This document shows positions 17,659-19,921 of a stretch of DNA of 64,000 nt, in pieces. The notes below the pieces were generated by a model. The model was not told the DNA's origin, made no database searches, and saw nothing but the letters and a program-made list of their open reading frames with translations. Within the stretch, counting starts at the first letter, position 1. Each line of letters begins with the position of its first letter. The DNA is from Octopus sinensis (Eukaryota). Where the stretch lies: NCBI RefSeq assembly GCF_006345805.1, contig NC_043026.1, positions 12,131,579-12,195,578 on the forward strand, given 5' to 3'. The position numbers were made by a program, and so were the translations under genes.

Positions 17659-19921
17659 TTATTTGTTTGTATGCTTAGATAAATGTGTTGTTAATTGTGT
17701 TTTTTGACAGAATGACTTGCTGCAGATATCACAGTGATGTAGCTTCTCTCCCGTATGAATACGCTTGTGTCTAGCTAAGCTACTACTCACGGAAAATGAT
17801 TTGCCACAAATATCACAGTCATATGGCTTCTCTCCTGTATGGATACGTTTATGTATAGTCAAGGTCCTTCCATCAGAGAATGATTTGCCACAAATATCAC
17901 AGTCATATGGTTTCTCTCTTGTATGGATACGTTTATGTATAGTCAAGGTCCTTCCATCAGAGAATGATTTGCCACAAATATCACAGTCATATGGCTTCTC
18001 TCTTGTATGGATACGTTTATGTATAGTCAAGGTCCTTCCATCAGAGAATGATTTGCCACAAATATCACAGTCATATGGCTTCTCTCTTGTATGGATACGT
18101 TTATGTATAGTCAAGGTCCTTCCATCAGAGAATGATTTGCCACAAATATCACAGTCATATGGTTTCTCTCTTGTATGGATACGTTTATGTATAGTCAAGG
18201 TCCTTCCATCAGAGAATGATTTGCCACAAATATCACAGTCATATGGTTTCTCTCTTGTATGGATACGTTTATGTATAGTCAAGGTCCTTCCATCAGAGAA
18301 TGATTTGCCACAAATATCACAGTCATATGGCTTCTCTCTTGTATGGATACGTTTATGTATAGTCAAGGTCCTTCCATCAGAGAATGATTTGCCACAAATA
18401 TCACAGTCATATGGCTTCTCTCTTGTATGGATACGTTATGTATAGTCAAGGTCCTTCCATCAGAGAATGATTTGCCACAAATATCACAGTCATATGGCTT
18501 CTCTCTTGTATGGATACGTTTATGTATAGTCAAGGTCCTTCCATCAGAGAATGATTTGCCACAAATATCACAGTCATATGGTTTCTCTCTTGTATGGATA
18601 CGTTTATGTATAGTCAAGGTCCTTCCATCAGAGAATGATTTGCCACAAATATCACAGTCATATGGTTTCTCTCTTGTATGGATACGTTTATGTATAGTCA
18701 AGGTCCTTCCATCAGAGAATGATTTGCCACAAATATCACAGTCATATGGCTTCTCTCTTGTATGGATACGTTTATGTATAGTCAAGGTCTTCCATCAGAG
18801 AATGATTTGCCACAAATATCACAGTCATATGGCTTCTCTCTTGTATGGATACGTTTATGTATAGTCAAGGTCCTTCCATCAGAGAATGATTTGCCACAAA
18901 TATCACAGTCATATGGCTTCTCTCTTGTATGGATACGTTTATGTATAGTCAAGGTCCTTCCATCAGAGAATGATTTGCCACAAATATCACAGTCATATGG
19001 CTTCTCTCTTGTATGGATACGTTTATGTATAGTCAAGGTCCTTCCATCAGAGAATGATTTACCACAGATATCACAGCAATAAGGTTTCTCTCCTGTATGA
19101 ATGTGTTTGTGTTTAGTTAAGTTGCTTTTTACCGAGAATGATTTACCACAGACATCACACTGATATGGCTTTCCTCCTGTATGCATGTATATATGAGTAG
19201 TTAAGCAATTAATTCGAGAAAATGATTCACCACAGATATCGCAGTCGTATGGCTTTTCTCCTGTATGAGTGCGTACGTGTTTAATTAATTGACCGGATTC
19301 AGTAAACGATTTACCACAGATATCACAGTGATATGGTTTCTCTCCTGTATGAATACGTTTGTGTCTAGTTAAGTGACTACCTACAGAAAAAGATTTCCCA
19401 CAGATATCACAGTGATATGGTTTCTCACCTGTATGAGTGTGTTTGTGAGTAGTTAAGTGACTCCTTACAGAGAATGACTTGCCACAGATATTGCACTGAT
19501 ACGGTTTCTCTCCTGTATGAGTACGCTTATGTCTGGTTAAGGGACCACTTTCAGAGAATGACTTATCACAGTGATATGGTTTCTCTCCAGTATGAATGCG
19601 TTTGTGTGCAGTTAAGTGACTATTCGCAGAGAATGACTTGCCACAGATATTACAACGAAATGGTTTTTTACCTGCATGAATTTGTTTGTGTTTAGTTAAG
19701 TTTCCTCTACAAGAGATTGATTTACCACATATATCACAGTGATATGGCTTCTTTCCAGTACATTTGTGAGTCATAAGGTTACCTTTTTTAAAAAATGACT
19801 TTTTACAGCTATTACACTGATATGGTATTTTTTCTATTTTAGGTAATATCTCCTCAGTAAAATCACTTCTTTTAGAGTCTGATTTACACTTGAAAGTATC
19901 TTCACACAATTTATTTGTCAT
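17659..19921 (-). CDS. C2H2 zinc-finger protein G2, about 754 aa and about 26 fingers if two 1-bp deletions are restored
   Basis: ORFs 18782-19921, 18363-18785 and 17659-18366 join once single-base losses near 18789 (GTCTTCC vs GTCCTTCC) and 18437 (CGTTATG vs CGTTTATG) are restored; 2263+2 = 2265 nt = 755 codons. Confidence 0.8.
17820..19080 (-). repeat. 84-bp coding minisatellite, 15 copies of finger [21 protein letters not shown]
   Basis: GTCAAGGTCCTTCCATCAGAGAATG recurs 15 times at an 84-bp period. Confidence 0.95.

What the first reader, a model, noticed from the sequence alone, without database searches (positions are those of the whole stretch)
17820..19080. PRDM9-like homogenised finger minisatellite: 15 copies of one finger with a non-canonical TREKP linker
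Seen: 15 consecutive 84-bp units encode the same helix (D-1 G1 R2 T3 L4 T5 I6). The only recurring difference is a synonymous Lys codon (AAG/AAA), plus two 1-bp losses in short homopolymers. The TREKP linker replaces TGEKP between the repeats, and the founder finger resembles G3 finger 6 ([19 protein letters not shown]). Known: such homogenised coding minisatellites are typical of PRDM9, but no SET or KRAB domain is present here. Inference: a very recent expansion giving a protein that would read a trinucleotide repeat of about 45 bp (Asp at -1 usually favours C), possibly a microsatellite or TE-tail binder with hypervariable copy number.
Basis: partly seen in the sequence, partly recalled or inferred. 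Interest (0 to 1): 0.75.

Follow-up and report, generated by a model that had tools for sequence, protein, structure and literature searches.

The report
Runaway finger repeat in octopus gene
One gene in a cluster of octopus-type zinc-finger genes has very recently copied a single 84-base finger unit 14 extra times, giving 15 identical fingers in a row; this is a striking but mechanistically ordinary coding minisatellite, and as assembled it is broken by two one-base deletions.

Summary
On the minus strand, 19081-17839, 15 consecutive C2H2 fingers carry the same helix (DGRTLTI). They are a founder finger plus 14 units of 84 bp (19015-17842). The only differences are one synonymous AAG/AAA site and two 1-bp deletions.

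The unit is a chimera: the helix half of finger A, the linker, and the hairpin half of the next finger B, joined in an 8-bp shared stretch (AAATCATT). This is the signature of unequal exchange or slippage followed by amplification. A Gly-to-Arg change (TGEKP to TREKP) arose in one early copy and spread with the array.

The gene (19921-17659) is one of six clustered poly-finger genes. Its short N-terminal leader matches, in full and at the N-terminus, only Octopus bimaculoides and O. sinensis proteins, so the window is octopod. There is no KRAB, SCAN or SET domain, and an in-frame stop upstream of the conserved ATG rules out a hidden N-terminal domain.

It resembles PRDM9 only in being an 84-bp coding minisatellite; the PRDM9 hallmark, diversity at DNA-contact residues, is absent.

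As assembled, translation stops after the fourth full repeat finger, giving 379 aa. Whether the deletions are real cannot be decided here. The proposed 45-bp trinucleotide-repeat reading is untested.

The parts
19980..19999 (-). Conserved splice-acceptor-like motif (AATATTTGTTAG|GAATAAAA) about 66 nt upstream of the start codon. G2, G4, G5 and G6 all share it.
   Evidence: Alignment of the four upstream regions; motif coordinates.
19973..19975 (-). In-frame stop codon between the acceptor-like motif and the ATG. Because of it, no upstream exon can add an N-terminal domain in this frame.
   Evidence: Frame-2 translation '...[23 protein letters not shown]', with positions.
19823..19921 (-). Start codon and 33-aa leader ([33 protein letters not shown]), the subfamily leader shared with G4, G5 and G6.
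   Evidence: ORF list; leader alignment. Full-length N-terminal leader matches occur only in Octopus proteins.
19082..19822 (-). Nine non-repeated finger units. Two were killed by in-frame deletions: the first finger at 19822-19745 lacks the last His (HKC--TGKKP), and the 75-bp unit at 19576-19502 lacks the second Cys (YHCD---KSF).
   Evidence: Translation and unit lengths.
19013..19081 (-). Founder finger [24 protein letters not shown]. Its helix half is identical to every repeat unit, while its hairpin half is not homogenised.
17842..19015 (-). The minisatellite proper: 14 units of 84 bp (1174 bp). Each encodes HTREKP + [11 protein letters not shown] + [11 protein letters not shown]. Each unit is the hairpin half of finger B joined to the helix half of finger A, with the junction in the shared 8-bp AAATCATT.
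18789..18790 (-). First 1-bp deletion (GGAAGGACC -> GGAAGACC on the coding strand). It shifts the frame inside the fifth DGRTLTI finger.
18782..18784 (-). Premature stop reached after the first frameshift. The ORF as assembled is 19921-18782, 379 aa.
18436..18437 (-). Second 1-bp deletion (CATAAACG -> CATAACG on the coding strand).
17755..17823 (-). Finger [24 protein letters not shown]. Its hairpin half and preceding linker (TGEKP, at 17841-17824) are the unmutated edge copy of the repeat's 5' half.
17659..17739 (-). Last finger ([23 protein letters not shown]), then TNK and the ancestral stop codon (17659-17661). It ends like the paralogues, a few residues after the last finger (G3, G4 and G6 end HTE[EQ]*).
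17474..17479 (-). AATAAA polyadenylation-signal-like hexamer about 180 nt downstream of the stop.
   Evidence: motif match only.

Best explanation
This is a young coding minisatellite inside a lineage-specific octopod poly-zinc-finger gene. It is not a PRDM9 relative.

Shown:
- The gene (ATG 19921, ancestral stop 17659, minus strand) sits in a cluster of six effector-less C2H2 genes. Four of them, G2 included, share its leader and acceptor motif.
- It originally had about 12 fingers.
- An 84-bp segment running from the middle of finger A to the middle of the next finger B was duplicated. The junction lies in an 8-bp stretch the two fingers share. This created a chimeric finger with B's hairpin and A's helix.
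- The unit now stands at 14 copies.
- The outermost half-units are not homogenised: A's hairpin, and B's linker with Gly.

Inferred:
- The duplication arose by unequal sister-chromatid or homologue exchange, or by replication slippage. Repeated unequal exchange then amplified the unit.
- A G-to-A transition (Gly to Arg, TGEKP to TREKP) in an early copy, and later a synonymous AAG-to-AAA change, were carried along passively.
- Two singleton 1-bp deletions are the most recent events. If they are real, the gene now makes a 379-aa protein with the leader, seven intact and two dead unique fingers, and four full identical fingers. The other ten repeat fingers and the two C-terminal fingers are then untranslated.
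- The amplification is most likely a neutral or mildly harmful by-product of minisatellite instability in a fast-turnover gene family, not an adaptation for reading a microsatellite.
- The ancestral protein was a sequence-specific DNA binder of the type predicted to target transposable elements.
For: Array anatomy and near-identity of the units.

Chimeric unit and 8-bp junction, read directly from the unit sequences.

Edge units not homogenised.

The AAA variant is present in 5 units, in adjacent pairs, so turnover continued after it arose.

Relative ages: G4/G6 are 90.1% identical, the G1 8-finger block duplication is 95.7%, and the G2 units are identical.

Piling-up rather than conversion: G2 has about 26 finger units, against 11-20 in G3-G6.

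Only C2H2 Pfam families are found.

No KRAB, SCAN or SET similarity anywhere in the 64 kb.

The ATG and acceptor motif are conserved, and there is an in-frame upstream stop.

The leader matches, full-length and at the N-terminus, only Octopus bimaculoides and O. sinensis ZNFs.

The frame breaks, leaving a 379-aa ORF.

The five other ZNF ORFs (about 8.4 kb of coding sequence) are uninterrupted, so the assembly is not generally indel-prone.

Gly-to-Arg at linker +2 lowers affinity about 4-fold in KLF1, and this Gly is the helix C-cap: PMC11327367.

Octopus ZNFs are predicted to bind TEs: PMC10547256.
Against: The two deletions lie in 2-3-nt runs inside a perfect tandem repeat. Consensus and polishing are least reliable in such places, so they may be assembly errors and the full 754-aa, 26-finger ORF may be intact.

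The older lesions in the gene (6-bp and 9-bp deletions) are both in frame, and the ancestral start and stop are conserved. The gene was therefore under frame-preserving selection until recently.

No read, population, orthologue or expression data could be reached. Exact look-ups of all window proteins failed. The homology search was swamped by generic zinc-finger proteins.

Neutrality of the expansion is inferred, not shown.
Confidence: 0.55

Rival explanations
1. Intact repeat reader. Both 1-bp deletions are assembly errors. The gene then encodes a 754-aa protein with 26 finger units, and its 15 identical fingers bind a DNA repeat of 3-bp period. Asp at -1 would specify a 3' C, so the triplet is of the form N-N-C, perhaps [A/T][T/C]C. 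Binding could occur in many registers, giving avidity for long microsatellites or repeat tails. Copy number would be polymorphic.
For: The conceptual frame-corrected translation is open from the conserved ATG to the conserved stop.

The deletions are singletons in short runs within a perfect repeat.

Older indels in the gene are in frame.

The best PDB sequence matches are the ZFP568 chains with about 10 tandem fingers.

Asp at -1 pairing with a 3' C is established zinc-finger-module knowledge (from my own knowledge, not tested here).
Against: 14 linkers carry Gly-to-Arg at +2. That substitution cost about 4-fold in affinity in KLF1 for a single linker.

There is no variation or selection signal at all in the array.

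No protein among the 314 fetched has more than 4 identical adjacent helices or this helix.

The only 3-bp-period microsatellite in the window is (ATT)n at 9221-9840, which lacks C.

The other five ZNF ORFs show no frameshifts, so indel errors are not common in this assembly.
Confidence: 0.28
2. Assembly artefact in copy number. The real locus has only a few DGRTLTI fingers, and the assembler inflated or mis-threaded the perfect 84-bp repeat.
For: Perfect tandem repeats of 1.2 kb are hard to assemble. No independent assembly or reads could be consulted.
Against: Assemblers usually collapse rather than expand perfect repeats.

The array carries internal markers in a non-random order (GGGGAAGGGAAGGA for the AAG/AAA site, plus two singleton deletions). 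Such markers come from reads spanning distinct units.

The chimeric junction and non-homogenised edge units are biologically coherent.

Other young tandem arrays in the window are assembled with 96-98% unit identity.
Confidence: 0.1
3. PRDM9-type recombination regulator, or a fragment of one, whose finger minisatellite is all that is visible here.
For: There is an 84-bp coding minisatellite with near-identical fingers. A uniform PRDM9 array with no amino-acid diversity has been noted in a minke whale assembly (PMC5519329).
Against: No PR/SET, KRAB or SSXRD similarity in 64 kb, using PRDM9-like queries among others.

The CDS starts at a conserved ATG preceded by an in-frame stop in the same exon.

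The leader and gene structure are those of an octopus-specific ZNF subfamily.

There is zero diversity at contact residues.
Confidence: 0.02

Closest known systems
PRDM9 zinc-finger coding minisatellite
   Same: Both have an 84-bp unit encoding one C2H2 finger plus linker, very high DNA identity between units, and growth and shrinkage by unequal exchange or conversion. Copy-number polymorphism is expected.
   Different: PRDM9 units differ mainly at the codons for contact residues -1, 3 and 6 (PMC5519329), whereas all 15 helices here are identical. PRDM9 has KRAB, SSXRD and PR/SET domains, and this gene has only a 33-aa leader. The linker here is TREKP.
Octopus-specific C2H2 zinc-finger gene expansion (Albertin et al. 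2015; PMC12513265; PMC10547256)
   Same: It lies in a tandem cluster of effector-less poly-finger genes. The CDICGKSFS framework is common to G2-G6 and to the Octopus relatives. The N-terminal leader finds full-length matches only in O. bimaculoides and O. sinensis ZNFs. The surroundings are rich in TEs and SINEs.
   Different: None of the fetched Octopus relatives, nor any of about 270 sampled poly-finger proteins, has more than 4 identical adjacent helices. This gene has 15. The papers consulted do not describe intragenic finger minisatellites.
KLF1 linker-2 Gly-to-Arg disease variant (mouse G349R; PMC11327367)
   Same: It is the same substitution at linker position +2, the glycine that C-caps the preceding recognition helix.
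   Different: In KLF1 it is a single linker (TGHRP type) in a 3-finger protein, with a measured loss of about 4-fold in affinity. Here it is repeated in 14 TREKP linkers, and its effect has not been measured.
Long contiguous natural or designed finger arrays (ZFP568 chains 5wjq, 5v3j; six-finger Aart, 2i13)
   Same: These are tandem canonical fingers. They are the best sequence matches in the PDB.
   Different: Their fingers differ from each other and they read a unique, non-repetitive site. Their linkers keep Gly at +2.

Membership tests
C2H2 (Krueppel-type) zinc finger proteins | C-X2-C-X12-H-X3-H fingers recognised by Pfam zf-C2H2 / zf-H2C2_2. | tested here: met
   PF13465 at E=3e-95 and PF00096 at E=3.8e-63 on the 379-aa ORF. 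23 strict fingers in the conceptual protein.
PRDM9 | PR/SET methyltransferase domain N-terminal to the finger array. | tested here: not met
   tblastn of the N-terminal parts of 120 ZNFs, including SET-bearing PRDM9-like proteins, hits only finger arrays in the 64 kb. Pfam finds only C2H2 families. An in-frame stop lies upstream of the conserved ATG in the same exon.
PRDM9 | KRAB-related and SSXRD domains. | tested here: not met
   Same searches.
PRDM9 | Finger array encoded by an 84-bp minisatellite with very high identity between units. | tested here: met
   14 units, four haplotypes, at most 1 substitution per unit.
PRDM9 | Amino-acid diversity between fingers concentrated at DNA-contact residues (-1, 2, 3, 6). 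| tested here: not met
   Diversity at these positions is zero in the 15-finger sub-array. The only variable residues are hairpin position 2 (C/D) and linker +2 (G/R) (criterion from PMC5519329).
KRAB zinc-finger proteins | N-terminal KRAB domain. | tested here: not met
   No similarity to the KRAB-containing N-termini of about 90 KZFPs outside the finger arrays. The leader is only 33 aa.
Octopus-lineage C2H2 expansion, leader-bearing subfamily | Short N-terminal leader (ME.EL.E..VKCE..SK..DF.D...GK) directly followed by the finger array. | tested here: met
   Leader alignment of G2, G4, G5 and G6. An exhaustive profile search finds 7 proteins matching the whole leader at their own N-terminus and one partial sequence matching it internally. 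All eight are from Octopus.
Octopus-lineage C2H2 expansion, leader-bearing subfamily | Genes arranged in tandem clusters. | tested here: met
   Six poly-finger genes lie within 64 kb.
Octopus-lineage C2H2 expansion, leader-bearing subfamily | Expression in nervous or embryonic tissue. | not testable with these tools
   No expression data could be reached. The feature is taken from PMC12513265.
Coding minisatellite / VNTR | Head-to-tail repeats of a 10-100-bp unit within a coding exon. | tested here: met
Coding minisatellite / VNTR | Copy-number variation between individuals. | not testable with these tools
   Only one assembly is available. There are no matches in the metagenome contigs or in the protein and contig look-ups.
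Unitary pseudogene | Genuine frame-disrupting mutations and loss of constraint. | tested here: inconclusive
   Two 1-bp deletions break the frame, but they may be assembly errors. The five neighbouring ORFs are intact. Older indels in G2 are in frame.

The most novel reading that the evidence does not exclude
The frame is really intact, and octopods carry a natural homopolymeric 15-finger protein. Its identical, weakened-linker fingers would bind a long 3-bp-period satellite or microsatellite in sliding registers. Finger copy number would vary between individuals, making it a repeat-length sensor that co-evolves with its target.
Probability: 0.1. Interest if true: 0.7.

Novelty: new member of a known kind. 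Interest (0 to 1): 0.35.

Why it matters
It shows, caught almost in the act, how zinc-finger arrays grow. A single mid-finger-to-mid-finger 84-bp duplication makes a chimeric finger, and runaway unequal exchange then multiplies it. A linker mutation that would normally be harmful rides along with the expansion.

It also shows that PRDM9-style coding minisatellites arise in ordinary effector-less zinc-finger genes of an invertebrate with a huge ZNF repertoire, without the contact-residue diversification that marks PRDM9.

If the locus varies in copy number, it would be a convenient natural system. It could be used to measure minisatellite turnover in cephalopods, and to ask how many identical fingers, and how many Gly-to-Arg linkers, a DNA-binding array tolerates.

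Tried and rejected
1. Exact look-ups of the G2 379-aa ORF and of G1, G3, G4, G5 and G6 in the contig and protein collections. G4 was queried only in the protein collection. None is on record.

2. Word-index homology search with G2. It was swamped by vertebrate KRAB-ZNFs, with at most 59% identity and no cephalopod in the top 120. It was not informative about orthologues.

3. Organism identification from a piece of the degraded LINE at 6085-8640. The best hit was 50% identical, in a metagenome. The only named hits were sea cucumber at 46% over 28% of the query. Uninformative.

4. Leader-only profile in the word-index search. The exhaustive profile search did work.

5. Rfam and tRNA scans of the window found nothing.

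6. Exact-pattern scan of the metagenome contigs for the repeat unit gave 0 hits.

7. A 5-unit (420-bp) higher-order repeat is suggested by the AAG/AAA order GGGGAAGGGAAGGA. It is not significant: p about 0.09 at lag 5 and 0.28 over lags 2-7. I do not claim it.

8. Long plus-strand ORFs across the array (17765-18445 and others) are rejected as artefacts. A perfect repeat that lacks a stop in one frame is open in that frame along its whole length.

9. One-to-one orthology of G2 fingers with G3 fingers was not resolvable. All inter-gene finger identities are about 80%.

10. The Albertin 2015 paper is not held in the library.
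Full report
OBSERVATION

Tandem Repeats Finder reports an 84-bp array at 17709-19532 (21.7 copies, 90% matches). The coding strand is the minus strand.

Cutting the sequence at each His-Thr linker and scanning all six frames for C2H2 fingers gives the following:
- Fifteen consecutive fingers share the helix D(-1)G1R2T3L4T5I6.
- The founder, [23 protein letters not shown], lies at 19081-19013 and is preceded by TGEKP.
- Fourteen units encoding [28 protein letters not shown] follow, at 19015-17842.

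The 14 units total 1174 bp and fall into four haplotypes:
- Seven with AAG for the linker Lys.
- Five with the synonymous AAA.
- One with GG->G at about 18789.
- One with AAA->AA at about 18436-18437.

A 50-nt core of the unit occurs 13 times without indels, against 0 expected by chance, and nowhere else in the 64 kb. Any other finger in the window is only about 80% identical to the unit at DNA level.

THE GENE AND ITS SETTING

The window holds six poly-finger genes:
- G1, 10981-13539, plus strand.
- G2, the gene in question, 19921-17659, minus strand.
- G3, 27053-28822, plus strand.
- G4, 38438-36840, minus strand.
- G5, 51200-50118, minus strand.
- G6, 63412-62057, minus strand.

Pfam finds only C2H2 families in the genes scanned, G1, G2 and G5.

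G2, G4, G5 and G6 share three features:
- A short leader, consensus ME.EL.E..VKCETDSK..DF.D.
- A conserved ATG.
- A conserved acceptor-like motif (AATATTT.YTAG|GAATRAAA) about 66 nt upstream of the ATG.

In G2 an in-frame TAA (19975-19973) lies between that motif and the ATG. No upstream exon can therefore add a domain in this frame.

To look for effector domains, I ran tblastn with the N-terminal, pre-finger parts of 120 database ZNFs. Many of these carry KRAB or SCAN domains, and several carry PRDM9-type SET domains. Outside the finger arrays, the best E-value was 0.004, on a finger-like remnant at 49500-49667. The gene is therefore an effector-less poly-finger gene.

ORGANISM

Exact look-ups of all six products failed. 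The G2 homology search was swamped by vertebrate ZNFs. A LINE fragment gave no close hit.

An exhaustive profile search with the leader did work. It returned eight proteins that match the whole leader: seven at their own N-terminus, and one partial sequence internally. All eight are Octopus bimaculoides or O. sinensis zinc-finger proteins. GC content is about 37%.

The window is therefore from an octopod. The cluster belongs to the octopus C2H2 expansion described in the literature (PMC12513265; PMC10547256). The species itself is not identified.

HOW THE ARRAY AROSE

This part is read directly from the unit sequences.
- The 5' half of each repeat unit (linker plus hairpin, ...GAGAGAAGCCATATGACTGTGATATTTGTGGC) equals the 5' half of finger B (17841-17755), the finger that follows the array. 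It differs from the founder A at several sites.
- The 3' half (CTCTGATGGAAGGACCTTGACTATACATAAACGTATC) equals the helix half of A.
- The switch lies within AAATCATT, which A and B share.

The primary event was therefore a tandem duplication of exactly one 84-bp period, from mid-A to mid-B. Unequal exchange or slippage between neighbouring fingers would produce this. It was followed by amplification to 14 units.

Further points on the history:
- The edge half-units, A's hairpin and B's Gly linker, remain unhomogenised. This is typical of arrays that evolve by unequal exchange.
- The linker codon is GGA (Gly) in the edge copy. Gly is also the residue at this position in 91.6% of sampled database linkers. 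All 14 internal copies have AGA (Arg). Gly-to-Arg is thus a derived transition that spread with the array.
- The AAA variant sits in five units, in adjacent pairs (order GGGGAAGGGAAGGA). Copying therefore continued after it arose. A 5-unit periodicity is suggestive but not significant.
- G2 has about 26 finger periods against 11-20 in G3-G6. Fingers were added rather than overwritten.
- On relative age, G4/G6 are 90.1% identical, the internal 8-finger block duplication in G1 is 95.7% identical, and the G2 units are identical. The G2 expansion is the youngest duplication in the window.

THE READING FRAME

The first deletion shifts the frame in the fifth DGRTLTI finger, and a stop follows at 18784-18782. 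The ORF as assembled is 379 aa. Placing a filler base at each deletion gives an open 754-aa frame from the conserved ATG to a stop that, as in the paralogues, follows a few residues after the last finger.

Arguments that the deletions are errors:
- They are singletons in short runs inside a perfect repeat.
- The older lesions of the gene are both in frame. One is a 6-bp loss of the last His of the first finger. The other is a 9-bp loss of the second Cys in the 75-bp unit at 19576-19502.

Arguments that they are real:
- The five other ZNF ORFs, about 8.4 kb of coding sequence, have no frameshift.
- Other young tandem arrays in the window show about 0-1% indels.
- Runs of 2-3 nt are not classic long-read error sites (my knowledge).

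I cannot decide this without reads, and I put it near even odds.

WHAT THE PROTEIN WOULD DO

The fingers are canonical, and the best PDB sequence matches are DNA-binding finger arrays: ZFP568, Aart, CTCF and PRDM9.

Asp at -1 specifying a 3' C is established zinc-finger-module knowledge (my knowledge). Thr at 3 and Ile at 6 are weak determinants. A homopolymeric array would in principle prefer a 3-bp-period repeat of the form N-N-C.

Three points argue against an optimised long reader:
- Every internal linker has Arg in place of the helix-capping Gly. The same change at +2 in KLF1 linker 2 reduces affinity about 4-fold (PMC11327367).
- TREKP is rare but natural, at 11 of 1239 and 21 of 2858 linkers in the sampled proteins. 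G4 and G6 carry TRGKP.
- The only 3-bp-period microsatellite in the window, (ATT)n at 9221-9840, lacks C.

The 45-bp repeat-reader idea remains an untested inference. It requires both deletions to be errors.

COMPARISON WITH PRDM9

Shared features are the 84-bp coding minisatellite and the near-identity of units.

Features not shared:
- PR/SET, KRAB and SSXRD domains are absent.
- PRDM9 shows amino-acid diversity concentrated at contact residues (PMC5519329). Here that diversity is zero.

A PRDM9 array without diversity has been noted in a minke whale assembly, so uniform arrays are not unprecedented. Among 314 fetched proteins, about 270 of them poly-finger, the longest run of identical adjacent helices is 4, and none has this helix. 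Fifteen is therefore unusual in degree but not in kind.

VERDICT

This is a real and striking, but mechanistically ordinary, young coding minisatellite in an octopod lineage-specific zinc-finger gene, possibly on its way to becoming a pseudogene. I class it as a new member of a known kind and score interest at 0.35.

Noticed in passing
window 11344-12687 (G1): G1 contains an internal duplication of an 8-finger block (672 bp). 11344-12015 versus 12016-12687 is 95.7% identical, with a core of 99-100%. This is a second, older example of intragenic finger amplification in the cluster.
   Followed up: partly
window 13685-13837: Two further well-formed fingers lie in a different frame, about 150 nt downstream of the G1 stop codon (13539). 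They may be a relic of a longer array or of a frameshifted 3' end.
   Followed up: no
window 5657-6026, 22467-23299, 32445-32975, 33298-33951, 43071-44321, 52605-52963, 53575-54392, 58047-58920: A SINE-like element of about 170-184 bp (...GTTCAAATTCCGCCGAGGTCGAC...GGGGTCGATAAATTAAGTACCAG...) occurs again and again as short tandem arrays of 2-8 copies, on both strands. ARAGORN and Rfam do not recognise it.
   Followed up: no
window 28878-30618, 13865-14805, 21318-21798: Satellites of about 252 bp begin with TTAACCC, which resembles a piggyBac-type end. Two sit immediately 3' of G3 and G1, and one sits upstream of G2. The period equals three finger units, but the sequence is not finger-like.
   Followed up: no
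window 6085-8640 (minus strand): A degraded LINE. Its endonuclease (Exo_endo_phos) and reverse-transcriptase pieces are in different frames and are interrupted by a SINE-like insertion. The closest database relative is only 50% identical.
   Followed up: partly
window 36840-38438 and 62057-63412: G4 and G6 are a paralogue pair, 90% identical at DNA level. Both carry a TRGKP linker (Arg at +2) before the last finger and a TGLKL linker mid-array.
   Followed up: partly
window 9221-9840, 59528-59824, 60201-60524: Very long microsatellites: (ATT) with about 215 copies, and two (TA) tracts of about 150-165 copies.
   Followed up: no
window 49491-49667 (minus strand): A weak finger-like remnant lies about 450 nt downstream of G5, outside any long ORF (best tblastn E = 0.004).
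   Followed up: no
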